Assembly: GCA_977030845.1 (NCBI GenBank)
Contig: OZ365115.1
Location: 28,272,001 to 28,336,000, forward strand
Direction: 5' to 3'
DNA: 64,000 nt
Origin: Fimbriosthenelais zetlandica
Lineage: Eukaryota
Shown: positions 16,818 through 64,000 of the stretch, piece after piece
How the letters are laid out: each line of letters begins with the position of its first letter
Position numbering within the stretch: position 1 is the stretch's first letter
Position numbers and translations under genes: made by a program
The notes under the pieces: model-generated
What the model saw: the letters and a program-made list of their open reading frames with translations, nothing else
What the model was told of the DNA's origin: nothing
Database searches by the model: none

Positions 16818-19800
16818 TCAAGTCAAGTCAAGACAAACAATCAATGACAAATGTCTGTAACGGCATAACAATCAACTTCATAGAATACTCAATTGGATAG
16901 ACGATATCACTTGGTTGTTTGGTCGTGGTAGAACGTAAATCGAGACCAGGTAGGCTTGGACTTCAGGCAATCTTCGGGTCCTTTGACCCACCTCGGGCCG
17001 CGATTCAAGTATATTACTCTCAAAACTAGTCTCAAATATGAACCGGATTCTTTTTCGGATTCCTAACCAGAAATATCATGGATATTTCGTCAAGAAGGGA
17101 CTATAAGGCATTGCTCTAGGTAAGTTGAACTTTGGGGAAACTTGGGGAACTTGGGGAAATTTGATTGTTATTTGGTGGACTGTGGGGTGGTGTGGTTTGA
17201 TCAAGCATGGTGGAATGGTCCACGACACGAGAGCATGTGTTTGTTGGTCAGTGCATCAGAGTACATGCAGCACAAAAGTTTCTAGTCGAAAGTGGTCATG
17301 AATATTTTCCCTTATAAATGTTATGATTTATAGGTCACGGTTTGTTTCACTATTAGATCAATTACTCGACCAGATCATTTGAAAGCTCTTAAAGTGGCAT
17401 TACAATTTATAAATATTCAAGATCATTCGTTTTTGTTTTTCAGTTGATGTAAACCTGCTGTAAAGCTTAACTGATAAGCCTGTGCTAGCGAGATCTGGCC
17501 CGCTACATATCACTCATCATCCGTCCGAACTACTAAAGCTAAACTACCAATGTAACGCTCATGGTAGAACTCGTGGTTGTAAATGACTTACTCATGGATG
17601 TCAATGACTTACTCATGGTTCTCAATGACTTACCGTCAGAGAACACCTGGATCAAGAACGAAATCTCTCCCGTGAATCATCTAATTTCTCACACACAAAG
17701 GACAGTGAATGAACTCTGAAGCTAAATGCTCATTTGTGCATGACGTGTATAGTCGATCCTCGGGGAGGGGCAGACCGTCGCTGGATCAGGAACAACTAGA
17801 CTAGAGAGAGTGTGGTATATGAAGAGGTTATGGAGAGTAACTCTTACTGACTGGAAGGAGTTGGCCCGCCTACCACACGCTTTAGGTGAGTTTGTTTTAA
17901 TATTTTGTGAATATTTTTTTAATCTTTAATTTAATTTTGCTTTCATTGGATTTTTTAATTTTTGGAATATTGGAATATCTAGCAGTCCATGATCTTTGTA
18001 AAATTAGTGAATTAATCAGGGTTATTTTCTTTCTTTGCAGTCTGCCCCCTCCCCGGTCGCAGTGAGTAACACATTAACTTTTAGGGCCTGCCTTTTTGTT
18101 GCGTTAATACTAACTTCGATTTTAAAACTTGTATTGCTCAAAATGTGATTTTATATCTCAACAAATGGGAGGTATCAATCCATAGGTAAACTATGAATTG
18201 AAATTTTAAGTGTAAACTTCCAATCTAACTTCCTTGAAACTTATATGAAAAATATTTTTGAGCAATACAATGTTAATTCTGTTTCCTTGTCATTCTTTTG
18301 CAGGCGTTTCTTAACATTGTTCTTAGTGGGTTTTGATTTCGTTTTGGCAGGCCCCCAATTGGTTAGGGGAATAGCACCGGCAGCTTAGGCAAGCATCTAT
18401 GCTCTTTACAATGGGAGTTTGGTGGTCCCAATGGTGATATCGTGGGTCCTAATGTTAAGTTATAAGTTGAGTCAGGCTAGGTCCTGCTGCCCGGTGCTTA
18501 CAGTGTCGCCTGTTAGAAAGCTTAGGACGGGGGGAGGGGGAAGGGGGAAGGGGAGGTTGTAGAAATCGTAGGTAGCCAGTCCTCCAATTAGACTAGACCC
18601 TTGACGAAATGAAGAGTGAAGAATGTCACAAAGTCTATCCAAACTAACTTGGACCGAAACGCCATAGAAATGTACACCGTGGTCTCGGTCCAAGTTAGTT
18701 TGGGCAGACGGTATGTGCCAAATGAAATTATGATGAATTTTTTTTTTCGTGATGCATAGAACTTTTACAAAAAATGATAAGAACACGCAAGTACATTGGC
18801 AAATGAAAATCATCAAATACACATTCTTAAGAAATGGATACAAAGGTGAACATAAAAAATATCTATGAAATGTTACACTGTAACAATCTCGCTACACGAA
18901 CGACTGCGCGAAACTGGAAAAACTACAAATTGAAAATAAGGTGGAAAATCAATGTGATCGACTACACCAAACATTGCGGAAAAAGGAACAAGGGTAGAAA
19001 AATACATCTGCGACTTCTCGAAACGTTTTTGAAAAAATAAGGTGGAAAATCAATCTCCGACCAAAGTTCTATTCAAACCACTGGAAAAAAAATAGGAATG
19101 AGAACTTTTCCAAGTCCCTCCTGAACAAAGGTTTTCCTTTTCAGCTATTTAAGAGCTGTTTATTTAAATATAAACGGCTCTACAGGTTCACTAATCATGT
19201 GTGTTTTATTCCAGCATCCTCAATGTTTAAACAAGGTTATGTAACTCTATATTTTTATTTTCATTGTTGACGAGTTTGTGGATATCACCACCCTAGAAAG
19301 ATCACCACTAACGACCCAGGTGAATATAATAATTAGGAATATTTCATTTTGTAAATTAATTTTGAGATCGCATCTGATTAGGACATCACTGATCATTGTA
19401 AAACTGCTCAATACTTTTGCTAATACTTCTCCAAATCTTATTTTCGCAGATATGGTCAATACGGAATGACCGAAAACGTTACACTGGTTCCCCGAGCTAC
19501 CACTACGCTTATGTGGCGCGGGATCCGTGGAATTTAAATCAGGACGTGGGGACCAGTCTACGAAAACGTATCCACACTGAATTCGTTATGGCGGACACCG
19601 GGCATGCTGGCGCCACCACACGAGACGGCCAGTAACGGAACTAGAGAACGCATGCGCCCGTCCTCGGTCAAAAGCCCCTATTATCGCTCACAACAAAACT
19701 GCTTCCATTCTCTCCCCGATTACTGGCTTACAAACAGTGTAGCTCTGTTATATTGGATGTGATAAATTCTTAATGGAAATCTACCGATGGATATTAATTT

Positions 19801-43939: not shown

Positions 43940-46336
43940 AGATGCGTCTACCTTAGAGAATCTATGGGGTATCAGTAGAAAAAAAGTGTAACTCGCTTAT
44001 GAAAATATTTATTATTACAAATCTACATTTGATACAACATTTGTTAAATTTATGTTGCAGGCAACCGAGAGATTATTTTGGGTAATTCGGGCACATTTCA
44101 TAAACAATTTGGATGTCCTTTCCACAGGTATATGTTGTATAAATACAAGTACCTTAGGTATGCCAATATGTTAACAGAAAGGCGCAAGCGAAGTTCCTGG
44201 CTGATAAAAGTAAGTAAGTACTAACGACACCTGAATCAATAACATAATGATATCAAAATAGTTAACTCAATGATGTAACAATTTGAGAAACAATAATAAC
44301 ATTTGGCCTATCTAATCTACGTAAATAATAAAATAATAAAATCTTTCGATAAAAGAGACTACCTATATAGGATGTGAGAGCAAATTCGAAAAATAAAACA
44401 TCATTGAATATGTTAATTAAAGCAGGGACTTCATTGCTGCGATTTTGCTTGCAACATTACTGCGACGAAAGTGATGCTTATATCCCAAAGGAGAACTGCC
44501 TCAACGCCATAATAATTATTATGTCTTCAACCAGTTTATAAATTTTATTGCGACACAAGCATCACCTTAGTTGCAGTAGTGAAAAAGAGTGTAAATTATT
44601 CAACAATTTTTTTCATCCAAATTACTTACTTATCAAGATTGTTATGATATTAAGCAACATGAAAACAATCTAATATGCTCTGAATTTTGGGGGTAGCTTT
44701 GGCATGTTCCTAAATTAAAATGAAATTGAAGGTTAATGCTATAAATATTTTGTATTTAAGGAGTATCATTTCAACAAAAATGGAGACGTGTATACATATA
44801 TTATATCGATCAATATAAGCAGAAAAGATATGTAGCCATAAATATCTTTACGGGACTAAGTCACTACTATTAGATATACTAAAATACAATGCATTTACAG
44901 AGAACATTACAATATATAATCTTAAAAATTTGCAAAAGGATACACAACAATGAGATTGCATGACCTAACATTATATTTGTTTTATACAAGCGTAACGTTT
45001 TGATAAAATGAAAAAGAGGATTTCTTAGGAATTTCAGAAAAAAAAGGTAAAAAAAACCCACCATGAAATGGAGGAATTTTTCCCAAATGACTGTCCAAAC
45101 TGTTTGCCTTTAAAGCGAGAAAATATTAAAAGGGAAAATATAATCATTCCATTGGGACCTCGAAAAGTCACCTATGTCTGAGGTATTTGAGGAATTGAAC
45201 ATTTCAACATAGTAAAGCAAAAATGTAAACATCTTTACAGTAAAATTCATCTTATCAAATAAAAGTTCCTGTATTAGTTGATTTTTCACAAGACATTTAT
45301 ATGTGCAATGGCAGTAATAGGCCTACATATTATATAGATCATACATGGATCATACACATCTATAATTATCTGGTATATACACTTAGACAAAGTTACATTC
45401 CAAACATGAATAGGTATATATACATAATATTCATTTTGTTATACAGTATCTCTGTCATAGAACAGAAAAAAATATTCTTCCCTCTAGGGGATATTCAATA
45501 TAACCAATCCTTGGTAGTGTAAGTCTCTTTAAAATCAGGCGATTAAAATTTCTATTTTCATAATTCACATTCTTACAATGGTACCACATATTTATTTGAC
45601 TCCAATTCAAGATTTTAATTCGGCATTTTTTCATGTGAAATTTTTCATGTGAAAATCACAAAATTGAAATACACACAAAATATACCAGACATGCAGTACC
45701 AGATATTGGTCTGAACTCGTCCTGGCAAACCAAGCTAAAATAATTTCATGCTGAGATAACTCATTATGATAACAGAGCAGTCAAATCATGAAGTAACAAT
45801 GAAGTAAGTCTTTGAAGTACATATATCCCAGTATCATTTTTTTTGTCCTGGGCATAATGCCATTGCCAATCCTCAGGGCAACTCAACAGTCGTTATATTT
45901 CTAATATTATGTTTCTTCAACTTGCCGAAGTCCATTAATTTTTATCCTTATTAATATTATTGTGGAAGTTTGTATTATGGTGACCAGAAGGTACTAGTTC
46001 CACAACCTCCGGGACCGCTTTATTCTCCAAGGTCTCCTATGAAGTCAGTCATATGACTTGAGACATGGGTCTTTAAAACCACAGCTCAAATATTAGTACA
46101 TACCGGGAGCCATTAGTTTTAGTGTAAAGCAATACAAGCTTGATTTGGAGCTCTCGCCTTGCAACAGGGTTTGATTCAAATCCTCCGCTTTTCTTCGTTC
46201 TTCTCTTTGCACATCGGCCATCCTCTTTTTCTTCTCTTGTTTCTGCCAAGTTTTTGAGTCCATGAGATGCCTTAATATAATGGCCTTTCAATCAGCCAAA
46301 ATATAGGATTTCTAAAATGTTTAGGATGTTCTCCGA

Positions 46337-49300
46337 TTACCAGACGGAACATTTCTTTCCTGGATTCATTTCACTACCAACAGGACATTTGTATGCCTCC
46401 GCAAAGTCATGTGAATTTGACAGTGCTCCAATTACCCTGTATGAAAAGAGAAGTAAAGTCTATCTATAGGTGCTGTCACCTGCTGTCAGAGTGAGCAAGA
46501 AATTAGGCTATTGTTTCATTTTGAAAATCATCAGGCGAACATACTCACCTGAATTTTCCTGGACTGTGCCTACCGGAAGAAATGGCTTGTATATAACTTT
46601 GGGGCCTTGAGTTACCACACCAAATCTAAATCAAACATAAGATAATCTCACGTTACATTGTTTCATTCATTTCTTTTAGTTAGAATTTTTATAGAGCCTG
46701 TTATGGGTGAATACCAGCTCACACTCTTGATTACACATTCATCATGTGAATTCTCACCCAGTGTCACCAAATTGGATGAAGTTGTATTTATAAAATATTG
46801 GTATATTTCTACCTGTGCAAAATTAAGGAAGAAGAGTTGGTTGTGTGTGAGGTCAACACCAGGTAAGAGGTCTTCCTCTTTCCCTTGCCTCTCCACCCAG
46901 CTTCTGTAAGCCTGCAAGTACAAAAACATGATTAACAAATTGAAAATCTAGAAGTAACTCTTAAGTATTTAGTGAAGCACTAGTGACGCAAAGACTGTTT
47001 TGATTGAGTGATTCAATCCCTGGTTAGGCAACTGTATCTCCTTAGATTGCATTGTTCTTGATCACCAGTTATCGTGATAAGAAGGAGGTGATGACGCAAA
47101 CTGTATTGAAGCAAACATCTGACTAGTATTTATGTTAGTATGAATTAACAAATGGCGCTTACCCTGAAAGCTTGTTTTAAGCCTCCGTTGTCTGCTATAT
47201 TCTCCCCTTGTGTATTTCTTCCATTGAGCTGCAATGGAATTCTTCGTGTTTATTCTGATATATTTGATAACGAGAAACTGTCAATTGGAATTGTCAATTT
47301 TCACGCAAAAATGTTACCATTGCCCAACCGCAAACTAAGATATTGAGTGGTACGTACGGGTGCGATTTTAAATGTATAAGTGTAGAAGTTTAAACAAATC
47401 CAGTATAGTGCTCTATAAATTGTATTTCTCAGTAAGAACTCACAGTTTTGTTGACCTCCACCACCAAGTAGTTGTCGTACTGGTCAATGATGCATTGAGC
47501 TTTACTCTTGAACTTCTTAACCACATCGTCTGACCACCATTGTTTCAGGTTCCCATTCTTGTCAAACTGGCGACCTAATTAACAAAAAAGATAGTAATAT
47601 AGTATTACCTCCAGTAGGCCTACCACGATAGCAATCTATTTTCTGAAGTTATTCCAGTAAGAGTTTATATCATATGGCTGGAGGCCCTATAATTTAAAAA
47701 TTAAAAATTATATTAGGCGTATTTCACAGATAATCTATGATATTTCACTATTTAATGCACATTCAATTATCAGAATAATATTTATACTTCCTTTGAGTTA
47801 TTTTTGTCCATACAATTAAACATATTACTTTTTCCCATGAAATGATATAAAATAGAATTTTATAATACAAAAATTGAAGCGGCAAACGTTATATTTATAT
47901 ATACATTGCAAATATACATTGTGTAACAACAGCAAGAAAAAGGCAGCAAAGTATCTTACCAGATTAGAACCAGCAGATATCAAATTCACTAGTGTTCAGA
48001 TGAGAAAAATAGTATCTACGTTTTTTTCCATAAGAAAGTGACTAAGTAAATAGCAGAGACGAGTATTTGGTAGGTGGTGGGTGCGACAGACAAAACATTC
48101 ACAAGCACAGTGAAAATGAAGAAAGACATGGATTGATTTTACACAATTAATGGGGTTAGAATGTACAGAACGAAGTAGGATATCCTTTCAGTGAGTCAAT
48201 AATATTGCAAGTCTGTTCAACATTATTCTATTTTTTGAGTAAACTATAATAATGGGTTACGTCGATTGCATGACAGTGTAAAATTTGTTTTTAGTTAGTA
48301 GTCAACCATCTATAATCAGAGAAATATAGGCTATGACAGGACATAATTATAGTATGCTTTTCCGTAAGAATAACATGGGTTCCTGGTATCCTGGAAGCAG
48401 GAAATATTAGTTCCAGTATTCCCCACTCAGTGTGGACTGGTTTTGCCCTAGCTTCCGGTGCTCTGACGTCACACAATGACATTCAAAATGGCCGTTGAGG
48501 TTTAGAAGTGCTCATTCGTCGAGAGGAGACTATTGAGTATTATTGAAATATTCATTCAGTCATGGTTCGCATTCGCATTTTGTCATGGTTCTTGAATTTT
48601 TCATTTCTATCTCGGTAGATCCAAACTAGTTTGAATGCTACTCTTCCTTCAAGGGCAGTATTATGACACAGATGTTAAAGGATCCTGTATTCTACACGGC
48701 ATTTTATTCTTATTATGAGCAATTCCTAATAAAAGTTGGAAACATGGAAGCTAAATGATATTAAGCTTCAATTGCTTCATATAGTATATATTTGGCCTTT
48801 TGCACATGCAAAGATATAAGCATCAGCTTTAGTTAAAGTTCTGGGCAAGCGTCTACATAGACTTCTGGAAAAACTAAGTGAAAATAAAAATAAAATAATA
48901 AACATTTTTAAAAAGAAAAGTCTCTCCAGAAGTATCATATGTAGACAATTGAGAAAATCAACACGTTTGATGCAATCAGGTTGATTTTCTTTAAAAAAAA
49001 AAAAAGACGTCGTTTTGGCAAACATTCCAAGCTCTTCATGATGTTCCCACTATTTTACACATTCTATTATATACATTTTGCTACAGGCAAAATATTTCCA
49101 AGACATTTGTCAATCCAATTTAGTGATTTTTTTTCTGAGCTGAAGTTTGTAGGCCAAAATATTCAACTTTTTGTTGTTTTGGTCGAATGGACAATACATT
49201 TTATTGTTCAAGGACATTGGATCTTTTCAATGACTGTAGCCTACAATCATACCTTTGTCATCAAACCCATGGGTTATTTCATGTCCAATCACCACAGCTA

Positions 49301-52300
49301 TACCTCCATAATTGATGGACCTGATGAGGATAATGATGATGTTTAACAATAATTCAGAAATATAAGCCTTTTGATCTTATGTTATCTTCATCCGCCCACT
49401 TGCACCAAAAAGGACGAATTGCACTGTTATTTTGCAGTATCATTCCTTACATGACCAAGTGTATGTTTTATGAGCTCTGAAGTCTTCCAGTTGTATGCAC
49501 TATTTAAATCCCTAGCAGGTTAATTATGCATTGGGTCTTAGATTATTGCTTTGTAAATTTTGCAATATACTCCTGGTGCTACAATGTGTAAACGAAAGTA
49601 ACAGGGATACAACACAAGTTACACTTTACCGTTAGTACACACAATTATTAGCATCTACATGTGAAACTAAAGCCCGACATCCACTGTACGATCTTTGAGG
49701 ACACCGATTTTTGTGATCGGCAAAGATCACAATAAAATCTTTACGGATCATTTCTCTATTGATTTACCATTGAAAAATTGGCGCCGATCCCAAGATTTTG
49801 ACATCCACCAGCCCGATCATCGGAACGGATCTTCTTTTTGGGTCCCGATCGCCTAAGATCGCAAAATAGGGATGAAAATCGGGCTGGTGGATGTCGGGCT
49901 TTATTCGCCATATGAATTATTGTGCCTACTATACCGAGGAAGCAGTACTTTTGATTATTACTAAGCTCGATCGTTAGTGTTCTGCGTATGTTTCTGCGTA
50001 AGTTTCACAGTGCCATCAGCTATAATATACATGTACCTCGATCATCAAATCCATGGGTCATCTCATGACCAATCACATTACCGATGCCACCATAGTACAT
50101 AGATCTTAGAGGATAGATGGAAATAAGAAAATAAAATCAAAAAAAGATAGAGGTAGGGAGAAAAACAGTAAATATGAAGCACATCTATAGCCTTGATGCT
50201 CTGAAAATTGATCTCGGAGTTTCCCAATGTTTGCTGCATTATTGTTATTCGCATAAAAACAGAAACTTCCGAATACACCATTCAATGAATTAGCCATGGA
50301 AAACCTTTTAAGGAACAACAGAAAAAAAGGGATCATCTATAGCATTGAACATGTTATGAAACAGAATTGTTGGAGACTTAGGAATATGCCTACTAATCGA
50401 AATACTGCTAATTAAGAGAAACCGAGAAGCAGAGTTTTCTTTTCTGTTAGTTGAAACTGCAGTGGGCTTTGACCATTATACCTACATAGTACATGTACAG
50501 TATTTTGGAATACTGCCAATCTTTTCAACAAAGCAGAAAGAAGTTTTGGTTATATTCAGCTATTATTGTCAGCCTAAAATCCTGTCACCGAGCCTTATAG
50601 TATGTTTTAAATTAGTGTACGGCGTCTTGTGAACCCTTTTATTGGGACAGCTATACCTTGATCATCAAATCCATGTGTCACTTCGTGGCCAATGACAAGA
50701 CCGATGCCAGCATAGTTCATAGATCTTAATATGGGAGAGATGAGAAGACTCAATATGAGAAGACGCAACATTAAAAAACCCACAAAACAATTGACATGGA
50801 ACATAATCATTGAACACTGCGATAAGAAGTCCTGTGGCCTGTTTCAAAAAGCATAATATTACTTGGGAATGATCCGTTATTTCTTAAAGATTTGAAAAAG
50901 AAACTTAGAATGTGAACAAGTTGTATTATAGCTGAAAGGTCAAGGGAAAGGTAAAGGGATTTGTGTTTGATGTCAGTTTGTACATAAGGAAAATAATGTG
51001 TAATTTCATCAGGATTTCATTAGGAAAATAATGTGGATTTTCTACCCTCATCACTCATCCATAAAGGGGATTTTAGGTTTGTATGTAAATTCTAATAATC
51101 AAGTGCTCATCGTTCAGCAAGGAGGAAAATAACCTGTCACAAAGTCCTCTATACATACATTATTTTAAAAATCGTGTACCAGATCATAAAATCTCTCACT
51201 CTCAAATCCTCTTAATATATATTATACCTTCATCATCAAACGCATGGGATACTTCATGGCCAATGGCAAAACCAATGCCTGCATAGTTCAAAGATCTTAC
51301 AGGAAAGAAAACAAATTAAAAAAAACAATAAGAAAAATACACATAATATAGGACATGACATTGTAGAACCTGCGCAAATCACTCGGGATGTTCATTTCTG
51401 CGGTTAAAGGAATTTGTGCTAAAACTGCTTGGTAGGAGGTCCAATCAATTAGTCAGAGGAAAAGTGAAATATATAGGCTTGAAGGATTCTTTAGCACTCT
51501 TAATAACATTAAATGTGTCGTCAACTATGTTGGAGTCTCTTACATTAAGATCAGATGGGGATAGTATATGTGTGCAGATGATTTGGCATTTTGGGCTGAT
51601 GTTGGTTCTATAATATAATTCTTATATCAGAGAAGGGGGTCTGGACAACAGAAGTTCATAAAGGTTGAGCGAAATTTTGTTTGTGGTTAGTTCAATTTGA
51701 CACCCAACATTATTCCAGAAAAATAAAAAAGGAGTTCAGTGTTGTAGGGAAGTTCTGTCACCAAGCCCAATGCATTATTTTAAAATAGTGAACACAGTCT
51801 CTTTAATTCTGCCTATCGCCCTCTTGCATAACTTCTGCGAGACTCCGCTGAAACTCTCGCTGCCAAGTCTCGCTATAAAAGAAATTTGTAGAACAAATCT
51901 GGCAGACCTTTTGCAAGTGGGAGCCAACAAACTGTCGCTGGGGTGCTAGCAACATTTTCCTGCATTTTCGTTTATCAGCGAGACTTGGCAGCGAGAGGTT
52001 TAGCGATGGCTCGCAGGTGTCATGCAAGGGGGTGATTTTTGAGGGCATTTTCTAATACCTTGATCATCAAATCCATGGGTAACTTCATGGCCAATCGCCA
52101 TACCAATGCCACTATACTTCAAAGAGCTGATGGGAGAGACGAAAAAAGATAATAACAAAAAGAAAATGAAGCAAAACACACAAAAAAAATAGTCAAAACA
52201 TGGAAACCTAGTATGATGAAATTCATTTGATCAATCCAATAGTCAAATGATCTTATCTTAACCCTATTTTCTGATGGTGTGCAATTAATTAGCTGTTGAA

Positions 52301-55300
52301 AACAGCTATATATCTGTTGTATTTAGGGTTTAGGATACCCGTTTGATCAGAGAGATTTTAATGTAGGCCTGGTGTCTTTAAAGAGATGTTAGAATTCAGA
52401 AAGTTCATCAGGAATAACACTCTGTGTTAAAATGGATTTGTAATAAAAAGGTGTCATAGGAACAAAGGGTATATGGGTCACCAAACAAAAATGACAAAAT
52501 CATACACTCACACAGATCTTAGAACCTAACGACTACGTGGCTAAAATAAAATAAGTCAAGGTGTGTTGGATATCAGTGCCATTGGTGTTAAGGTATCTAC
52601 CAGTACTACAATCATACAGAAGAAAAAAAACACAACTAGAAAATATAATCCAGGGATCTTAAGTGAGTTCTTACACTTTTTGGAAGCTCAAGGTTATTCT
52701 ATTACCAGTGTTTGTCAAATTCATGAAGGATGCTTCAAGTTTGGACAGTAGTAGTTTATTTCACAGTTGGTGTGAGCATGGTGAGGAGCAATGACTCATT
52801 TACTCGAAAATCATGACGCAATGAATAAGGAGTAAGTATTGCACAACCTACTCAGTTACTCAAAATGGTGATGCAATGGATAAGGAGTATGGTGTGCAGA
52901 CTTTTTTTATGGCATGCAGACGTTTTTATTCACAGTTTGTAGACTTTTCTCAATCTTATATGTTCATTTTCAAATCCTATTTGACATTTTACATCACTGT
53001 CAACATGTACTTTTCTCATTCAATGCTCAAACGAGGAAATTGAACTAAATTGGACTTTTGAGATATCCTTCATGAAAAGAAAACATGCAGCTAGATTGTG
53101 GTTTAGTAATGATTTATTCATAAACATGACAATAAGTCTCCACAATTAAAAATGTAAAAACAATTTTTTTAATTTTTCTCTATTTTCTACTATCATTTAC
53201 TATTATTTACTATTTTTCTCTATTATCTACTATTTTTTTAATATTATTTACTATTGTTTAATATTAACTACTTTTTTTTTTACTATTATTTACCATTTTT
53301 CTCTATTGTTGTACTATTATTTCCTATTATTTACTATTGTTTACTATCATTTACTATTATTTACTATTTTTCTCTATTATCTACTATTTTTTACTATTAT
53401 TTACTATTTTTCTCTCTTTTTTACTATTTTTTACTATTTTTTGCTACATTTTACTATTATCTACTATTAAGTACTATTTTTTACTATTATCGACTATCAT
53501 TTACAATTTTTTACTATTATTTAATATTTTTCTCTATTATCTACTATTTTATACTATTATTTACTATTATTTACTGTTTTTCTCTATTTCATACTATTAT
53601 TTACTATTTTTCTCTATTATCTACTATTTTTTACTATTTTTTGCTACATTTTACTATTATCTACTATTAAGTACTATTTTTTACTATTATCGACTATCAT
53701 TTACAATTTTTTACTATTATTTAATATTTTTCTCTATTATCTACTATTTTATACTATTATTTACTATTATTTACTGTTTTTCTCTATTTCATACTATTAT
53801 TTACTATTTTTCTCTATTATCTACTATTTTTTGCTACATTTTACTATTATCTACTATTATCTACTATTAAGTACTATTTTTTACTATTATCGACTATCAT
53901 TTACTATCTTTTACTATTATTTAATATTTTTCTCTATTATCTACTATTTTATACTAATATTTACTATTATTTACTGTTTTTCTCTATTTCATACTATTAT
54001 TTACTATTTTTCTCTATTATCTACTTTTTTTTACTATTATTTACCATTTTTCTCTATTTTTGTACTATTATTTACTATTATTAGTAAATACTATTAGTTA
54101 ATAGCAAAAAATAGTAAAAAAAATTGAAAATGATAGTAAATAATAGTAAAAAAATAGTAGAAAATAGAGAAAAATAGTAAATAATAGTAAAAAATAGTAG
54201 AAAATAGAGAAAAATAGTAAATAATAGTAAAAAATAGTAAAACATAGTAGATAATAAAGAAAAATAGTAGAAAATAGAGAAAAATAGTAAATAATAGTAT
54301 GAAATAGAGAAAAACAGTAAATAATAGTAAATAATAGTATAAAATAGTAGATAATAGAGAAAAATATTAAATAATAGTTAAAAATAGTAAATGACAGTCG
54401 ATAATAGTAAAAAATAGTACTTAATAGTAGATAATAGTAAAATATAGCAAAAAATAGTAAAAAATAGTTAAAAAGAGAGAAAAATAGTAAATAATAGATA
54501 TATCCTTATCCATTGCATCACCATTTTGAGTAACTGAGTAGGTTGTGCAATACTTGCTCCTATATTCATTGCATCATGATTTTTGAGTAAATGAGTCATT
54601 GCTCCTCACCATGCTCACACCAACTGTGCAGTAAACTACTACTTTGGACAATCATTCTTGTATTACTGTTCGAGACACATTCAACAGAAACAACAATGTT
54701 CTCGACATCAATATGTCAAAAATTATGGAAAGAAACATTTTTCACAGAAAATTTCCTTCAGAATATAACACATACTATTAAGAGATATACTTGAGCCTCC
54801 ATATACAAAGGGTGAAAAGGTATATGGAAAGCCAATAGACGATTCTTTGCATGATTTACAACAACATTAATTTCCCAGGGAATACAAACCTCTGTCATCA
54901 AAACCATGTGTTATTTCATGGCCTATGACCATACCGATTCCTCCGTAATGAAAAGACCTGTCATAAATCACAAGTTGCAAAATGGAGCATCCTGAATATC
55001 GTCCCACACTTCATTTCGGTGGCAATTTGTACATGCAATTGTACATGTTTTTTCAAAATTACTTTGTTCCAAATTTTATTAAAGAAAATAGGGTATACTC
55101 TCTTGAGAATTCAAATAATTATGATTGTAATGAGGATTGTTACGTTGTTGGTGGTAATGGCTTGTCATTGGGAATTTCTAATTACTTCCTTGATTTTCAA
55201 AGATTTTTGGTTAATGAGGAAAATAAAATGTTACTTGATAAGGCCTAGTTAAAATTAATGAAGATAGTCTCGGTGATAATGGTTGAGTTAGTATCAGGTT

Positions 55301-58300
55301 CTACATGTACATTATACAATTGATGATGAAATATTATACTTCTACAAATAATTTTGACTATATGACAACTAAAAAAACATACAATTAAATGATTATCACA
55401 TACTATGCAAAGGTAATGTAAATGACAGAAGTAATAATTTTAAACTTTGATACAAAGTTCTTAGGTGGAACTGTTCATAATGAATTAATAGAATAGATGA
55501 TATCACATAATACAATATTAAAATCTACTTACTTGGGATATGTATCGAGGTAGAATGGTGGTTGGAATATAGCTGCCGGGAACACTGAATATGTATGAAC
55601 ATGATGCAATTATTCAATGATGAGACCCTATTTAATATCTAAGAAAATATAAGATAAATTTTCATACAAATAATCAATCAATCAAAAATTGTGAATCCTA
55701 CTTACTTATTTGATTTTTGGTAGCACTGTAGAAAGCGTTGACAATAACTGGCGTGGTTGACCACCTGAATGGCACAGATGGAAATGGTAGGCCTTATTTC
55801 AATGATAATTGTATTTACATCTTTTATCAAAATCCACTTTTATTATGTCAGACATGTCTTCATACTGTGCTAAAGTAATAATATTTAAAGTAGGCTTTTG
55901 CCAGGTTCTTCGGGCCCATGGGGATCGAGTGGTGCACCCCAGCCTGCAGGCTTTGTGCACCTATCCCTATTCTTTATTCTTCCCTCAACCACTTTCATCA
56001 AAGATCCACATAGGACATTTCAGTGAAATGGTCATACTCACTTTGTTCTGTCTACGAGTTTGGGGAGATTTTTCAGGTTCTGTTGCGTGGCTATATTTAG
56101 AAGTTTGAGTACATTCTCAAAATATTTCTCAGGGTCCATTTCCATCTGAAAAAATATTGTTCATGTATGAATAAATGGTTTACTTTACACATATTTCACA
56201 GTCACATAACTTTTTAGATTGAAGTGACCAACTCAGTGTGAATCATTCTCAGAGACACCACTCTATAATTTGTTTTATTAAAATGTATACAAACATGTGG
56301 TTTAGTAACTTACCCCGTCATAGTCTAGATCAAGAGCTGTGTTGTTGAGGATGTAGTCAGGGTAACCAATCTTCCCCTGTATAGCGTCTGCCTAACAGAG
56401 AGAACATCTTTCACACTTCATATTAATGACAGAAATAACGTTAACATTGTAGCTTCACTGCCGCAAATGACTTGAGCACTATTTGCGAAGGTTGACTATA
56501 TTGTGCTCTAATTACAAGTGGTTGCAGTTGAGGCCATGGCAAAGTTAGCCATAACAAAACAGCAAAATTCACAAGGCAAAAGAACACGAGTGGAGCTACC
56601 CCAAAACCATTTTTAAAACGCTGGATGTGTTACAATTAGGCTCAAATAAACGGAGGTGAGAGTCTCGATTTAGAAAGTGTCCTTGGCCCTTTTCCTCTTC
56701 AGTGCCTCACTAATTGGTAAATGCTGCTGTCAACAGGAAGATGTTAACCCCCTAAGGAAAACCAGCCCGGGCCTGTTTCATCGTAGACATTTTCCATAGA
56801 CTTACCATTGCTAATGGTTGTTCTGAAACAGGTCCCTGGCCTTTTTTTCACATTGGTCTCCTTCAAGAATCTATTAATACTCATCAGACCATAAGAGACC
56901 TTTTCAAATGCATCATTTATAGTCTGGCTTGAGTGCTTTCTATGGACTTTTTTTCCGTAACTCCAATTGGAAGCCAAGACCTATACAGTTTCCCAAACTC
57001 AGTGACCTGGGGCATGTTTCAGCGTAGACATTTCCTATAGACTTAGCATTGCTAATGGTTGTTCTGAAACAGGTCCCTGGACATTTTTGACAAATACAGA
57101 TTTCAGCAATTGAGTTATAAATGCGCAATTGAGTCATATATGAGCGCAAACCCAACCAAGCTATAGTACCCACTTACGGCACAGCCTGGAGATCAACCAC
57201 TGACAAAATGTCTCATGTCATAAAAAGCCCTGTTCACATGTGGAACTTATTTCCCATGATGCGCTTACATCAATGTAATGGCAGCTCACTTCTACAGTAA
57301 CAGAGCGTTGCTGGTAATGCACACGTACATTCGGGAACAAGAAATGGGGGCAAAGAGAGCATTTAGAACATTGAGAGGTGGAGTGGACACTTCAGCAGAT
57401 ATAATGATAATGTATATTGTACATTAGAGACTGTGGTTGGAGCAAAGACTGACCTTTTCCCTGGCGACCTCACGTGTCATTTCGTCCATCCACGACACGT
57501 CTGTAAGGAGCTCATTAAAAGATGCCCGGATGTTCGTAATCATTTCGAGAGCCTGAGAGAACATGACAGACATGAGCATCATTATACAAAAGACTATTAT
57601 ATACACCAAAGTTGTATATAACTTTATAATGATAAGTAGTAGGAAATAATGAGGAATATGTGTAGTGTCCGTTGGCAGTCGTCAATGTATAAATGTGCAT
57701 TAATTTATGTTTAATAATTATATGGAATCTTTATGACGTGGAATCGATGTAACAAAAATTGGGTGTATATTTTGTGAAATATGGGCGAACTGGAATTGGT
57801 ACAAAATCAATCAATTAGATTGGTTAACATTTTAGAAAAAGTGGACAAAGTTGAACTTTGTTTCTCTGAAAATCAGAAGCCTTCTGAGAAGGTTCAGTAA
57901 CTATTAATAATAATTGTATTAGTTAGAGATATGTATTTCATATATTGGTCAAAATATTGACGTGACATATACCAGAGACACCCAATCCATCACTGCAATA
58001 GCGGGTCAAAAAAGAGAGACAATATACTCACACTTGTTTTAGCTTCCTCATTGAAATATTTCTGGACAAATATCCTGCCAACGGCCATCCCAAAATTATC
58101 AATGGCGTAATTGACACACGTGCGCCATCGGGCTCGGTCGGTGTCTGTGCCATAGAGGACCTGAAAGGAGCATATGTTTACATGCACTCGGTGGGACATA
58201 GATGGAATCTGACGGTGTATAGAAAAGCTTCAGTGCTAATCTATAGAAGGGTGGCATGTCTGTGCTTTGTGGCATTCGCCCCACTACAGAGGGAAGCCAT

Positions 58301-61300
58301 GGTACCGTTCTCCCTTTGTGGTTCAGCCTTTGGCAGAAAGGGGTATGATTGCTTGAATGGTGATGAAGTTCAAAGAAGCAGAAAATAAGCATCCATGCCA
58401 GTATACATGCATTTAATGCAGAGTACCGGTATATATCATAATATTTTATGGATACATTTTAAGTCTGGTTATGAAACAAACTAAGGTCAGCAATAGTTTT
58501 TTTTACTGAATTCAACTGAATACCCCGTGAAAAATATTTAATTTACTCAACATTTTATTCGCGTGTTTTTTTTAATACCATGAAGTTTCACCATTAGGCG
58601 TTGTTCCTTCCTCTTCCTGTTTACTTACTTTGTTGTACTGTCTTCTAAGGTCCAAATACTTCTGTGGCATGTTGCTAACACGGTTCATTACAATCCTCCA
58701 GTTCATGTAGTTGGCAACCGTTCTAAGAAATGAAACAACAGGTAAAAATATTATCATTGTGGGTGAAATTTTAAAAGCTGTATATATACATGTATGAAGC
58801 TACCAAAATTCATGACATGTTCATTATATCTGAGTGGATGTCAGTCTACCTGTGAACTGTTTAGAACTGGTATAACTCCAATGTTTTTATTGAATTGCTT
58901 GTATTGCGATTTTTGTTGTGGCAAAACCTAGCAACTGACTTTTCCTCGGGCAATTTCGGCAGCCTCCCCTGACTTGCAAGCCGGCCATTTTCTGGCAGAA
59001 ATATCAAGAGCATTGCCTTTTGGGCAGTAGCGAGTCAGTTGCGAGGTCCTTGCGAGTATGTATATCTCTATTGCCACAAGTGAGACCTCTTCCAAAATGC
59101 CGCAAAAACGCAATACTTGCAAGGAAACAATATGCTACTGGAGTCAGCCCATTCAGAGCAATTATAGTCAGGTCAACCTGATAAAATATCAAGGAAGATA
59201 GGGTCATGCAGTTCACTTAGCCTAGTAGAGAGCGCAAACATGTTTGATCACAATGAACGAACTATGATAGTGCCCATTGCTCACCTTTTGGGCGTGTTCT
59301 TCACAAGGATGGCCAGTTCCCTGAGGAAGTCTGGAGCATACACGATGACTTCATCGTCCATGGTCAAGTTGATACTGACATTGTTAAATATCAGGTTCAG
59401 ATACCGGTGCCAGTCTATCTCCTGAATTCAAAAGTTTTGAGCACGCACACTACATTATTGAAAAATACTCTGAGAGCAACAAAATATATTTTGGGCCATC
59501 TGTGTGAAAAGTTCCAAGAATTTTTCACTTCATCATGCTGGCAATTTTTTCAGGTAATGAGAAGTGCAGAGATTCCAGGGGCATGTTTCAAAACGAATAT
59601 ATTTGGTATATCTGGTTTGTTTCGGCTTCAATTAGTATTAAAATTAATGTTGAATATGGACTCTTTGGATATCAGACTTACATCTGTGACATTGGAGTAG
59701 AGGTCTCCAATGGTCATCTTGTTATAGAGAGCTTCTGTATCGCGCCGTTCATCGTCTGGTACCGTCAACTAAAATGATCAGATCATCTATATTATAACTA
59801 TATACATTATGCATGTTTGTATGGATGAGATGGAGGTAAATGAGCAATATTTATGAGTACTATAATCATTCTAAGATATACTTTACATTTGCCACTTCTG
59901 TTTCAAATGCCACCATTTCTTCCATCTCAGAAGCAGCTGTTGCTCGATTAGCACCAAGCGCTTCGGCCACCGACCTGGCATAGCGTTTGTATGCATTGAC
60001 CTGTTCACGATCTTCCTTCAAGAAATAGTCCCTGCTAGGCATGCCCAGTTGAGTCTGGTCAAGCTGAATTAACAAGTATAAAAAGAATGTGACTTAAACT
60101 TAAAGTCGGTTCAAGACATTGCCTGGGTAAAAGTAGTTTAGTTTCTAGTCAAAATGCCAAACCTCCTAGCTGCATTGCCAAGATTATGGCAAGTTGTGCT
60201 ATTTCTTACTGTCTTTTTAAGAATAGGCCAACTTTTCGCCTTTTGTAGTGTGGCTAGAAGTAGAACTATATATGTACTGGCTTGTGCTTCTCAGATACTC
60301 TCATCAAACATAAGACCTTGAATCTGGGTCAATAATTCTGTTGCGGTCATAGTCCTGAAAGTCAAGGGCTAACCGCAACAAAATCGAAACACTCACAAAA
60401 GCAAAAGAACCGCAGAAGGGTTAACATTTTAGTGAAAATTTGAATGATTGAGAAACTGTTTTCACACCTACTTGTATGACATTGACACTTGAGTTTTTGT
60501 CATCCGATGACACCCATTGGTTGATGAGGACGCGGTTGTTAAGGAGGCGGAGCGTGGCCGCCTGTGAGACCCAATCAAATTTGGACTCATCCCATGTGGC
60601 GTCCAACACCGGCCAACCACCGATGTCTCGGAGGAGCTGTTTCAGGGGAACGTCTCCACGATTCTCTATCTGGTCTATGGTAAATATGAAGTAAGGGTAA
60701 TTCAGTTTCAAAATATATTTTACAGTTTAATCTCAAACTTGCTTCCCTGTTCACTTGAATTTTAACTGAGGCATGTTTGAGTTCAATCACATCCTAATCC
60801 GGGATCCTAATATCGAGTTAGGGATAAGGGAAGTTGTAAATTCGGTAGTCACCCACAAATTATAATGACACTAGGAAAGTCGGAGTGAGAAATGACATTT
60901 ATAACAAACTGCTGCATGGCTGGAGGAATAATTATGGTGCCTGAACACTGAAAACACATAAAATCCCCACCAACTTTGCCAATTTACCAATAGAAAAGGA
61001 ATATCCAAGGGTTCCTCCAAATTCCCAATGAACATGAAGATTGTTCAAGGCCAGATTGATCTAGAGAAATTCACTGTAATTCTTACTTTAATATCATGTA
61101 ATCGATTAGAAAGGAAGGGGAAGTCTATCTATATTTTTTCTTTATACTTTATCTGTTTAAACCTACCCATATCAAGGCAGGACGTGTAGAGGTGCTTGGC
61201 ATTCCTAATGCCAATTGCTTCATCTTCTGAAATTGGTGCCTCTAACAAGCCTGGAAAATATAATTTATAATGTAAAAAGGTTAGATATGAACCAGCTCAT

Positions 61301-62558
61301 ACACAACGAGGAAAAAAAGAAGCTGAGAAGTGCATGAGATTGTGCACGTGGATTATGAACTATGAACTCTTGAACCGAGTGTTATATAATGCCTTTTGTT
61401 CACCTATGAGTTCCCCAACAGCTAGTGGGGCTCATAAGAGCTCAGCTCATAAGAGCTCAGCAATATCAGAAGAACCTTATGAGATCTTACAAGACCTTTA
61501 CGCGAACCAAAGCCTTTTATTATACTAAGTTATATACAAATAATACCTTTGAGAATGACTTGGAGCTCGTCCCTGAGTTTGCTAAAGGTGTTGTAGTGAG
61601 ACCTATCATCTGGGATGATGTTCTTCCTGTTCCATGTTCCACATGCATACTGGAAGAAGTCATCGCAAGGATCCACTGTCGTGTCCATTGCCTCTAGTAC
61701 ACGACTCGCTTTACAGAAGAGCAAAATCAATGGTCATTCTTCATCATCAATTCAGAGTAATTCAACTATAGGGGTTTTTCATTATTACTTTTTGTAGCAT
61801 ATCGTTAGGACTTTTATTGTAGTGGATTGACACACTCGCAACAACTTATGAGCTTGTGGCACCTTTGGTTGATGCGATTGTCACATAATCAGGAATGGCA
61901 AGCGCTTACTAGTTGAGTTACATTTGCAAGCAGTAAAAATCCAAGTGGAGCTATACCCCAATTAACATATAGGACAGGTAAACGATTATTTGGGGGTCTC
62001 TAGCTGCACTAATGCGATTTATAATCAATAATATTATAGCTGGATATGGCTTAGGGAATTAATATTGAAAATTTCAGTGAAAATATCTACCTGTCGACAC
62101 ACAGTTTGCTGTCATGCATATCTTCTGTCCATTTTTTGTTGTTTCACTAACGCTGCCTGAAAGCAATGAATAGTAAATGCACTTTAATAAAATCTCAATT
62201 TTAGACTTAGAAAGTGATCACAATTTGCAGGGCCCTGCCAGTGGTAGTCAAAATGCATAATATAAAGTGATTTGATATGAACAGAAGCGTTGCCGCGATC
62301 TTGGTCCGATTTGGGATGAAGTTAACCAAATTGGCACCAAAGACCTCAGGCAGAAGAGAGAGCGGGCTTGAGGCAATAAGACAATACATAATTTATTGCC
62401 TTTAGATGAAGCCAATCTGGAGCCAAACTTGCACTGTACCTTTGCTTTGAGATGCCAACAGTATGATGGTAACCAAGGCAATGATGAAGAAAAGAAGAAG
62501 AATGAAGAGGAGTATTCTCTCCAAGGATGTTCTCCTTCCCCACCAGGATCGCCCCGAC
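46337..62558 (-). CDS. M13-family membrane metallo-endopeptidase (neprilysin/ECE-like), 5'-partial
   Basis: Constitutive exons in transcript order: 62558-62440 (TM), 62156-62091, 61708-61547, 61250-61167, 60674-60472, 60063-59887, 59768-59682, 59421-59285, 58722-58629, 58160-58032, 57552-57454, 56391-56314, 56145-56042, 55764-55706, 55584-55533, [one HExxH exon], 47574-47444, 47228-47163, 46911-46813, 46625-46549, 46436-46337. All are GT-AG and in phase. Motifs: [27 protein letters not shown], GHExTHGFDD, [21 protein letters not shown]-terminal KCSVW*. Confidence 0.97.
49253..49320 (-). CDS. HExxH exon variant 6 (last in transcript): (K)[22 protein letters not shown](G)
   Basis: 68 nt, cag| ... 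|gtatga, phase 2 to phase 1. Confidence 0.88.
49671..49900. mobile_element. MITE of about 230 bp, same family as 38110-38340, in opposite orientation
   Basis: TIR AGCCCGACATCCA/TGGATGTCGGGCT; the interior is the reverse complement of the 38.1-kb copy. Confidence 0.8.
50037..50104 (-). CDS. HExxH exon variant 5: (K)[22 protein letters not shown](G)
   Basis: 68 nt, aag| ... |gtacat, same phases as the other copies. Confidence 0.85.
50657..50724 (-). CDS. HExxH exon variant 4: (K)[22 protein letters not shown](G)
   Basis: 68 nt, aag| ... |gtatag. Confidence 0.86.
51228..51295 (-). CDS. HExxH exon variant 3: (K)[22 protein letters not shown](G)
   Basis: 68 nt, aag| ... |gtataa. Confidence 0.86.
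51816..52035. mobile_element. Inverted-repeat element of about 220 bp (MITE-like)
   Basis: Perfect 21-bp inverted repeat at 51854-51874 and 51977-51997, with imperfect arms extending to both ends. Confidence 0.75.
52059..52126 (-). CDS. HExxH exon variant 2: (N)[22 protein letters not shown](G)
   Basis: 68 nt, cag| ... |gtatta. Confidence 0.86.
52748..54642. mobile_element. Foldback-type non-autonomous DNA element, 1895 bp
   Basis: TIRs of about 140 bp (52748-52886 and 54503-54642). TTTGGACA is duplicated on both sides (52740-52747 and 54643-54650). The interior has an AT-rich tandem array (about 53165-54095) and its inverted copy (about 54097-54500). No transposase. Confidence 0.88.
54890..54957 (-). 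CDS. HExxH exon variant 1 (first in transcript): (K)[22 protein letters not shown](G)
   Basis: 68 nt, cag| ... |gtttgt. Closest to the canonical neprilysin [17 protein letters not shown]. Confidence 0.88.
55295..55310 (-). promoter_or_regulatory. Candidate RNA docking site for the exon cluster (transcript sense GUACAUGUAGAACCUG)
   Basis: Partly complementary to short sequences located upstream of each variant exon's acceptor (see findings). Confidence 0.4.
56769..57077. mobile_element. Two copies of the ~69-bp GGGCC-TTTCA MITE (56769-56836, 57009-57077)
   Basis: Near-identical to each other and to 43871-43939. Confidence 0.7.
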
Positions 62559-64000
62559 CTGTGAGAAAATGAAAAATTCATTTGAAACAAATTTTCTCTC
62601 AGATTATAACAGCCATTCCCCAGCCATGCATCGACATGTCACCTAATTATAGTCAAACCGATTACATTATAAATAATAAATAATATTATTTTGGACATTT
62701 CACTTTTCATTTGAACATTAATATATCCTTATGCCTTGACTGCTCTGGCAGAAACAACAGTGTAAAGACTTTCCTGTGGTAGCCCCTCACACAATGGCCA
62801 CCTCTCATGCAGTAATGCCTAGGCTTTAACGAAGTTTATTGTAATTACTCCAATATTTTACCACCTCTCAATAATTACCAGCTAAACTTAAAGTCTTGAT
62901 ATTTAAGGCCAACGGCATTTCTAACGGATCATGCCGCCTCACAATGCCACTGATTCCACCTAATTTCCTTCTTTTAATTCATTGATAGCATTTTTGCCCA
63001 GCATTCCCATGACAAGCAGCTTAATCAGGGTCTCGGTTTTTTATCACTTTCTATAATCTGTTTCGGGGAAAGGGAGCACGTAACGATTGCAGCCACAATT
63101 AGGATCCTTTAACGGACCTGATTAGGTTTCTCAGCTTGCTTTGGGAACGTTCTAAAGGTTGGGTTTGGTCTGGCATTCAAAAGGTTAGCCTGGACCCCAG
63201 CTTTCTGAAGTCTTCTATAGTATACGGAGATACCTGCTTCAAACTATGATCGGTTGACTGAAGCCTGATTCACACACTGTGCCCTTGATGTTTCATCAAT
63301 TATACTGCACCTTCTATGTTACGATCCGAAAAAAACATTGGTATTTGACCATTGACAACTGTTACAGTGGAGCGCCGTCACTGTGACGAAACAAGTGTGC
63401 AAAGCAGTACTGTGGCAGTGACTGTTGGTCATTCTATCAGGCCATTGTAGAACCAATATAATACTGAGATATCAGGTCATTTTACAACCAGTAGGTATAT
63501 ATACTGAGATGTTGCATGGAAGTAATAAATAACAATAAGCGTATACATAGTTTCGGGAACTCCCTATTAAAGACAGACCCTGTATGGTAGCCATTAACTG
63601 CGTATAATATAATTATCATTATGTGACGTTAGTTATAAGACGTTAGTTAAGACAATAAAAGCGCCATGAAGTCCTGTAACAAATATTATACAGAATACCC
63701 TACAGTTTGGGTGTGGCTTGATTAAGAATAATTATATTATACAGAAGCCAAACCATTCTTTGAACCCTTGTGTAAATCTGTCGGCTGCCTGAGCACTTAA
63801 GGGCCAAAGGTCATCTTAGAAGGTCATAATTTTAGCCTAGAGTCTTTTTAAGTATCGCAGTGATATGGATTTACCAACATGAATGTTCTCCACCACGGAC
63901 ATTAAACGCAAACTCTCTACTCCAGTGGCAATTCAAGTCAATGCTTTTTCTGCATAATCCGGGAAGTAAATACAACTTATTGTTAGACATGTTTTTTCTC

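What the first reader, a model, noticed from the sequence alone, without database searches (positions are those of the whole stretch)
49253..54957. Six tandem, intact copies of the catalytic HExxH exon: a swappable active-site cassette in an M13 peptidase
Seen in sequence: between single-copy exons 55584-55533 (..[10 protein letters not shown], ends phase 2) and 47574-47444 (GRQFDKNG.., starts phase 1) there are six 68-nt exons. Each has AG/GT ends, the correct phases, no stop codon and invariant S-x-x-Y-x-G-I-x-x-x-I-G-H-E-x-[TS]-H-x-F-D-D. No other exon of the gene appears duplicated. Because 68 is not a multiple of 3, skipping all copies or including two or three shifts the frame, so one per mRNA is the natural productive outcome. 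Invariant residues show many synonymous codon differences, which fits purifying selection rather than decay. Established knowledge: in neprilysin this segment carries zinc ligands H583/H587, catalytic E584, D590, and S1' pocket residues M579/V580. The copies vary at that pair: MV, MA, FA, LV, NV, VV. Inference: one gene makes up to six enzymes with different cleavage preferences through mutually exclusive splicing of the active site. I do not know of a described case of this in M13 peptidases.
Basis: partly seen in the sequence, partly recalled or inferred. Interest (0 to 1): 0.93.

Follow-up and report, generated by a model that had tools for sequence, protein, structure and literature searches.

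The report
Six alternative active-site exons, M13 peptidase
One neprilysin-like protease gene, probably from an annelid worm, carries six intact interchangeable copies of the small exon that builds its zinc catalytic helix, so it could make six enzymes with different substrate pockets, but no RNA data could be obtained to show which copies are used.

Summary
On the minus strand an intact 21-exon, 727-aa M13 (neprilysin/ECE-like) gene spans about 62581-46337. All have AG/GT ends, none has a stop, and there is no seventh or decayed copy.

Only one copy per mRNA keeps the frame. Skipping all copies, or including any two or four, gives an early stop more than 370 nt before the last junction.

The copies are old: dS is 0.3 to saturated and the flanking introns no longer align. 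They are also constrained: 17/22 third codon positions vary against 13/44 first and second positions, and the catalytic residues are invariant.

Related genomes carry the same array between the same flanking exons:
- five copies in one unnamed assembly and four in another;
- two in Owenia (annelid);
- two in Lineus (nemertean), where RefSeq isoforms X1 and X3 differ exactly in this 22-aa exon;
- a single copy in Ridgeia and Mytilus.

No sequencing run was listed, so use of copies 1-5 is unproven. The only close transcript uses the copy-6 type. No docking/selector RNA pairing was detected.

Verdict: a real, probably functional mutually exclusive exon cluster, and a new member of a known kind. 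An earlier scan note on this same stretch (s1-189686) proposed docking/selector pairing, which my tests did not support.

The parts
46337..62581 (-). Complete M13 (neprilysin/ECE-like) peptidase gene: 21 exons and 727 aa when one HExxH exon is included. It encodes a type II membrane anchor and the NAFYS, HExx[10 protein letters not shown] and HSPGKFR motifs, and ends in CSVW.
   Evidence: The spliced model has GT-AG at all 20 introns. Its exons hit Pfam PF05649 and PF01431. It is 88% identical to the Logan transcript protein P0248 and 67% identical to Ridgeia P0166. The true start may lie further upstream, because P0248 has a longer N-terminus.
55533..55584 (-). Constitutive exon 15 (..[16 protein letters not shown] plus 2 bases), with a strong donor CAA|GTAAGT.
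54890..54957 (-). HExxH exon copy 1 ([22 protein letters not shown]; pocket pair MV); donor GAG|GTTTGT.
52059..52126 (-). HExxH exon copy 2 ([22 protein letters not shown]; pair MA).
51228..51295 (-). HExxH exon copy 3 ([22 protein letters not shown]; pair FA; the HAFDD segment matches ECE-1).
50657..50724 (-). HExxH exon copy 4 ([22 protein letters not shown]; pair LV).
50037..50104 (-). HExxH exon copy 5 ([22 protein letters not shown]; pair NV).
49253..49320 (-). HExxH exon copy 6 ([22 protein letters not shown]; pair VV). This is the 'GGIA..DDK' type found as the last copy of the arrays in L002 and L004 and as the only copy in Ridgeia; the close transcript L005 carries the GGIA form ending in DDR.
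47444..47574 (-). Constitutive exon 17 (G|[13 protein letters not shown]...VEVNKT).
53172..54497 (.). Two opposed 10-nt-period minisatellite arrays inside the intron between copy 1 and copy 2. They could form a hairpin with arms of about 350 nt in the pre-mRNA. Any role in splicing is unknown.

Best explanation
The six 68-nt exons form a mutually exclusive exon cluster made by tandem exon duplication. Exon 15 is spliced to one of the six copies, and that copy is spliced to exon 17. Each choice gives a 727-aa type II membrane zinc peptidase that is identical except for 22 residues. Those residues are the active-site helix, which carries both zinc-binding histidines, the catalytic glutamate and the Asp equivalent to neprilysin D590. 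The two residues equivalent to M579/V580, which face the S1' pocket, differ between copies.

Because 68 is not a multiple of three, an mRNA with zero, two or four copies runs into an early stop codon and should be removed by nonsense-mediated decay. Only single-copy mRNAs are productive.

Copy 6 is the ancestral type. Copies 2-5 arose by duplication within this lineage.

Shown here: the anatomy, the frame logic, selective constraint on every copy, arrays in related genomes, and annotated exon swapping in a nemertean orthologue. Inferred: that copies 1-5 are actually spliced in, that the choice is regulated by tissue or stage, and that the isoforms differ in substrate or inhibitor preference.
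For: - All six copies have an intact AG, GT, length, frame and catalytic residues, and there are no decayed copies.
- Only single inclusion keeps the ORF. The premature stops lie 373 nt or more upstream of the last junction.
- The duplicates are old. Pairwise dS is 0.3 to saturated, dN is 0.10-0.26 and dN/dS is 0.05-0.65, while the flanking introns share no detectable similarity.
- 17/22 third codon positions vary against 13/44 first and second positions, Fisher p = 0.0005.
- The same array lies between the same flanking exons in two other unnamed assemblies: L004 with five copies, all AG/GT, and L002 with four. Owenia has two.
- Lineus longissimus RefSeq isoforms X1 and X3, both 771 aa, differ only at residues 593-614, which is exactly this exon. 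Both 68-nt exons are present in tandem in its genome.
- All six alternative donors lack the consensus A at +4, against 13/19 constitutive donors that have it, and they score lower overall (Mann-Whitney p = 0.015). Weak donors are typical of regulated exons.
- V580 is a documented S1' contact, and single active-site substitutions change neprilysin specificity by orders of magnitude.
Against: - There is no transcript evidence from this species. No sequencing run was listed, and no protein of the window's species appeared among the listed hits.
- The only close transcript (P0248/L005) carries the copy-6 type.
- Single-copy orthologues also have that type, so copy 6 could be the only one commonly used.
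- Within the young clade of copies 2-5, the codon-position signal alone is weak (p = 0.10) and dN/dS reaches 0.65 on only 22 codons.
- L002 copy 2 has lost its acceptor, so copies can die.
- No cis element that would enforce exclusivity was found.
Confidence: 0.65

Rival explanations
1. Only the last, ancestral-type copy (copy 6) is spliced into mature mRNA. On this reading copies 1-5 are silent or very rarely used duplicates that have not yet decayed.
For: The one transcript from a close relative uses the copy-6 type. The single-copy Ridgeia orthologue and an intronless retrocopy also carry the GGIA type. All alternative donors are weak. L002 copy 2 has lost its AG.
Against: The introns around the copies have diverged beyond alignment and synonymous sites are near saturation. 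Even so, all five upstream copies keep their exact length, both splice sites, an open frame and every catalytic residue. A rough estimate uses a neutral rate of about 0.25 substitutions per site per copy. It gives well under 1e-5 for keeping H, E, H, D and the four splice-site bases in five copies by chance; this figure is my inference, not a tool result. In Lineus the upstream copy is used in an annotated isoform.
Confidence: 0.17
2. The copies are spliced, but largely non-productively. Inclusion of two copies, or of none, would be used to send transcripts to nonsense-mediated decay and so tune expression. On this reading the array does not exist to make six enzymes.
For: Every zero, double or quadruple inclusion gives a premature stop in a position that should trigger decay. 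No exclusivity element was found.
Against: A purely regulatory poison-exon role would not need conservation of the catalytic residues and the reading frame in each copy, nor the excess of synonymous change.
Confidence: 0.1
3. The array is an assembly or haplotype-duplication artefact.
For: None found. Raw reads could not be examined.
Against: The copies are only 71-84% identical and lie in distinct unique introns of 503-2763 nt. There are no N runs in the window. Independent assemblies of other species show comparable arrays.
Confidence: 0.01

Closest known systems
Lineus longissimus (Nemertea) orthologous M13 gene, RefSeq isoforms X1 (XP_064642717) and X3 (XP_064642721)
   Same: It has the same exon (68 nt, same phases, same flanking exons) duplicated in tandem. 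The annotated isoforms have equal length and differ only in these 22 residues (MVI against VVV before GHE).
   Different: It has two copies, not six. The isoforms are automatic predictions, and I found no paper describing them. The Lineus gene also has a second alternative cluster at the HSPG..R exon, which is single in the window.
Arthropod mutually exclusive exon clusters (Dscam1 exons 4/6/9, Mhc, 14-3-3zeta), chosen through docking-site/selector RNA pairing
   Same: Both are tandem arrays of homologous exons of the same length, made by exon duplication, with one exon expected per mRNA.
   Different: No docking/selector complementarity above shuffled controls was detected here, and no conserved intronic element is shared with the arrays of related species. 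The swapped segment here is an enzyme's catalytic helix, not a binding domain.
Human neprilysin (MME), MMEL1 and ECE-1
   Same: They belong to the same family and fold. ECE-1 (3dwb) and neprilysin (1dmt) are the best solved matches. The HExxH, D590, M579/V580 segment is homologous, and from my own knowledge the motif lies in one small exon in the human gene too.
   Different: The vertebrate genes have a single HExxH exon. Known ECE-1 isoforms differ only in the N-terminal tail through alternative promoters (Bland et al., PMC2259306, mention four isoforms). Other invertebrates diversify this family by gene duplication, not by exon arrays.
Enzymes whose active site is switched by mutually exclusive exons (for example coq-2 exons in helminths, annelids and molluscs; ketohexokinase A/C; pyruvate kinase M1/M2), from my own knowledge
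   Same: One gene makes enzymes with different catalytic or regulatory properties by swapping one homologous exon.
   Different: Those are two-way switches. Here there are six alternatives, and the exon carries the metal ligands of a protease.

Membership tests
Peptidase family M13 (neprilysin/ECE) | Pfam Peptidase_M13_N (PF05649) and Peptidase_M13 (PF01431) domains | tested here: met
   Single exons of the window hit PF05649 (E 6.5e-15 to 3e-10) and PF01431 (E 3e-8). Three tested HExxH copies hit PF01431 positions 31-51.
Peptidase family M13 (neprilysin/ECE) | Zinc site made of HExxH plus a downstream Glu in GENIADNGG, with the NAxY, HSPxxxR and C-terminal CxxW motifs and a type II membrane anchor | tested here: met
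   All are present in the spliced 727-aa model: [30 protein letters not shown], and a hydrophobic stretch [20 protein letters not shown] near the N-terminus.
Peptidase family M13 (neprilysin/ECE) | Peptidase activity | not testable with these tools
   This needs expression and an enzyme assay.
Mutually exclusive exon cluster from tandem exon duplication | Adjacent homologous exons of equal length and phase, each with its own functional-looking splice sites | tested here: met
   There are six 68-nt exons, all AG/GT and all in the same phase.
Mutually exclusive exon cluster from tandem exon duplication | Exactly one exon of the cluster in each mature mRNA | not testable with these tools
   No sequencing run was listed. 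Indirect support comes from three results: only single inclusion keeps the frame, Lineus isoforms swap the exon, and the related transcript L005 holds one copy.
Mutually exclusive exon cluster from tandem exon duplication | Each alternative is kept by selection | tested here: met
   dN/dS is 0.05-0.65 with saturated dS and unalignable introns, and third-position variation is in excess with p = 0.0005. The signal is weaker within copies 2-5 alone (p = 0.10).
Dscam-type docking-site/selector competing RNA structures | One docking sequence in a flanking intron that is complementary to a selector next to every variable exon | tested here: inconclusive
   The best duplex windows are no better than their own shuffles. 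The count of windows complementary to 4-5 inter-copy introns equals that of dinucleotide shuffles. Sensitivity is low without closely related genomes.
Steric-hindrance or U2/U12-incompatibility type of exon exclusivity | Introns between alternative exons too short to splice, or mixed spliceosome types | tested here: not met
   Introns between copies are 503-2763 nt, and all donors are GT with no U12-type ATATCC or GTATCC consensus. By contrast, the two Owenia copies are only 55 nt apart.

The most novel reading that the evidence does not exclude
One gene makes six catalytically distinct ectopeptidases by regulated mutually exclusive splicing of the zinc-binding helix. Each isoform would have its own S1' pocket (M/F/L/N/V at the 579 position, V/A at 580) and would be deployed in different tissues to process different neuropeptides or hormones. 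This would be an exon-level route to the diversity that insects and nematodes reach with 20 or more M13 genes. Arrays of this exon occur in at least two lophotrochozoan phyla (annelids and nemerteans); whether they arose once or repeatedly is unresolved.
Probability: 0.35. Interest if true: 0.78.

Novelty: new member of a known kind. Interest (0 to 1): 0.6.

Why it matters
Mutually exclusive exon clusters are a known way to diversify proteins. Cases that swap the metal-binding catalytic helix of a protease are not described in the literature I could search. If the six isoforms are expressed, one gene supplies a panel of neprilysin-like enzymes that differ at pocket positions.

That would be a natural experiment on what sets M13 specificity, which bears on neprilysin inhibitor and enzyme engineering work. 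It would also be an alternative to the gene-family expansion seen in insects and nematodes.

The comparative data (2, 4, 5 and 6 copies, or a single copy, in different lophotrochozoans, plus a second cluster at the H711-R717 exon in Lineus and Lingula) suggest this gene is a hotspot for exon-level diversification of the active site. This can be tested with ordinary RNA-seq.

Tried and rejected
- RNA evidence: the look-up of sequencing runs on 47400-55600 (rna) and on 46000-47600 (any) listed no runs, so read laying could not be used.
- Protein searches for isoforms of this species found only one close transcript protein, P0248, in a cluster with a single member. A search with the 43-aa downstream exon found four genomic fragments.
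- Docking/selector pairing: sliding 22-nt windows of the intron before copy 1 and the intron after copy 6 were tested against the inter-copy introns with RNAduplex. The best windows were not better than their shuffles. A count of 12-16-nt complementary windows hitting 4-5 introns equalled dinucleotide shuffles. I rejected this as unsupported, not as disproved.
- Conserved intronic elements between the arrays of the window, L002 and L004: none found.
- UGCAUG (Rbfox-type) motifs looked 4-6 times enriched against mononucleotide shuffles. Their density equals the rest of the gene and is close to the window background, so I rejected this lead.
- An exon tree across species resolves only one clade, window copies 2-5 (support 93/92). 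Orthology of the other copies cannot be settled with 68 sites.
- The house-spider venom paper that mentions an ECE gene with 22 transcripts (PMC6700725) and the Schistosoma paper do not concern this exon.
- The Lingula locus look-up failed because the service was busy.
- Structure prediction was not run, because the tool returns no coordinates for pocket measurements.
Full report
**What is there**

A motif scan finds six HExxH segments on the minus strand at the stated places. Reading the flanks shows six exons of exactly 68 nt: 54957-54890, 52126-52059, 51295-51228, 50724-50657, 50104-50037 and 49320-49253. Each follows a pyrimidine tract plus AG and is followed by GT. The residue pair four and three positions before the first His is MV, MA, FA, LV, NV and VV. 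Profile searches of the whole window, at DNA and protein level, find these six and nothing else better than E about 2. There is therefore no seventh or decayed copy.

**The gene**

With homologues found through one N-terminal exon, tblastn shows every other exon once only. A splice-aware assembly gives 21 exons, all introns GT-AG, and a 727-aa open frame. The model has a membrane anchor and the NAFYS, HExx[17 protein letters not shown] and terminal CSVW motifs. Individual exons hit Pfam Peptidase_M13_N and Peptidase_M13. ECE-1 and neprilysin are the best solved relatives.

The protein is 88% identical to a transcript-derived protein from a Logan assembly (P0248, run ERR14707600). It is 67% identical to a protein of the annelid Ridgeia and 53-60% identical to proteins of molluscs, a brachiopod and nemerteans. 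The window most likely comes from an annelid. The real start codon may lie upstream of my exon 1, since P0248 has a longer N-terminus.

**Frame logic**

Each of the six single inclusions gives the full ORF. Skipping all copies stops at codon 552. Every pair or quadruple stops at codons 573-581. These stops lie at least 373 nt before the last exon junction, the classical position for nonsense-mediated decay. The statement 'one copy per productive mRNA' is therefore shown from sequence.

**Age and constraint**

- The copies are 71-84% identical.
- Pairwise dS runs from 0.3 to saturation, dN is 0.10-0.26 and dN/dS is 0.05-0.65. The 300 nt on either side of the exons share no similarity beyond chance.
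- 17 of 22 third codon positions vary against 13 of 44 first and second positions (p = 0.0005). For copies 2-5 alone the contrast is weaker (p = 0.10).
- A tree of all copies from five species resolves only one clade, window copies 2-5 (support 93/92). At least these four arose within this lineage.

Unused exons that had drifted as far as the introns would not be expected to keep length, frame, both splice sites and all catalytic residues in five copies. That last step is inference.

**Relatives**

| Source | HExxH exon copies | Notes |
|---|---|---|
| L004 (ENA ERZ25069296, unnamed) | 5 | all AG/GT; same flanking exons |
| L002 (ENA ERZ21781341, unnamed) | 4 | copy 2 has lost its AG |
| Owenia fusiformis (annelid) | 2 | only 55 nt apart |
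| Lineus longissimus (nemertean) | 2 | RefSeq isoforms swap the exon |
| Ridgeia (annelid) | 1 | GGIA type |
| Mytilus | 1 | |

In both ENA arrays the last copy is the 'GGIA..DDK' type, like window copy 6. That type is also the only copy in Ridgeia. The close transcript L005 and an intronless retrocopy (L008) also carry it. Copy 6 is therefore the ancestral form.

In Lineus, RefSeq isoforms X1 and X3 have the same length and differ only at residues 593-614, which is exactly this exon. This is the closest thing to transcript-level support that I could obtain, and it comes from another phylum.

**Mechanism of choice**

- Introns between copies are 503-2763 nt, so steric hindrance does not apply here. 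No donor is U12-like.
- All six alternative donors lack A at +4, against 13 of 19 constitutive donors that have it, and they score lower overall (p = 0.015). Their pyrimidine tracts are as good as or better than those of constitutive exons. This fits regulated exons.
- Two tests for a docking sequence complementary to every inter-copy intron gave nothing above shuffled controls.
- No intronic element is shared with the other species' arrays.
- An apparent UGCAUG excess vanished against proper background.

What enforces exclusivity beyond the reading frame remains unknown.

**Function**

The exon aligns with neprilysin residues 571-592. Position 579 is the most variable (M, M, F, L, N, V), and 580 is V or A. 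Reviews list V580 with F106, F563 and W693 as S1' contacts, and M579 as a ligand contact in docking. Engineering work shows that single active-site substitutions change neprilysin specificity by orders of magnitude (PMC4121237). Different P1' preferences of the isoforms are thus plausible but are inferred.

**Literature and novelty**

Five full-text searches and the main M13 family survey gave no description of alternative HExxH exons. Automatic RefSeq models already contain the two-copy Lineus case.

I class this as a new member of a known kind, the tandem mutually exclusive exon clusters. It is notable for its size and for swapping the catalytic helix of a protease. First-reader notes list many other candidate clusters in this genome (unchecked), so the mechanism may be common here.

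The main weakness is the lack of any RNA data for this species.

Noticed in passing
window 53172-54082 and 54100-54497: The intron between copy 1 and copy 2 holds two opposed minisatellite arrays. Their units, ATTTTTTACT-like and AATAGTAAAA, have a 10-nt period and are reverse complements of each other. They form inverted repeats of 345-388 nt at 73-90% complementarity. The pre-mRNA could fold into a very long hairpin there.
   Followed up: partly
L007 22783-25780 (Lineus longissimus); Lingula isoforms P0348/P0195: Orthologues in a nemertean and a brachiopod have a second alternative cluster. Equal-length RefSeq isoforms differ only in the exon for the segment equivalent to neprilysin H711-R717, which includes position 714, where an engineered G714K changes specificity. 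That exon is single in the window.
   Followed up: partly
L009 46633-46700 and 46756-46823 (Owenia fusiformis): There are two tandem 68-nt HExxH exons separated by an intron of only 55 nt. This spacing might enforce exclusivity sterically. The two Owenia protein models in hand (P0184, P0387) both carry the second copy.
   Followed up: no
L008 1001-3334 (ENA ERZ25072999): An intronless 777-aa copy of the orthologous peptidase, probably a retrocopy. It carries the GGIA-type active-site segment.
   Followed up: no
L002 about 18109-18176: Copy 2 of the four-copy array has CA instead of AG before the exon and a poor pyrimidine tract, so it is probably dead. This shows birth-and-death turnover in these arrays.
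   Followed up: no
window 57173-56943, 56980-56747, 43996-43847, 331-194 (minus strand): An interspersed repeat gives similar open fragments (..[13 protein letters not shown][IM]GNVYAET..). Two copies lie inside an intron of the peptidase gene.
   Followed up: no
window 62435-62640: The related transcript protein P0248 has about 19 more N-terminal residues, plus 8 extra residues between my exons 1 and 2. The first exons of my gene model may therefore be incomplete.
   Followed up: no
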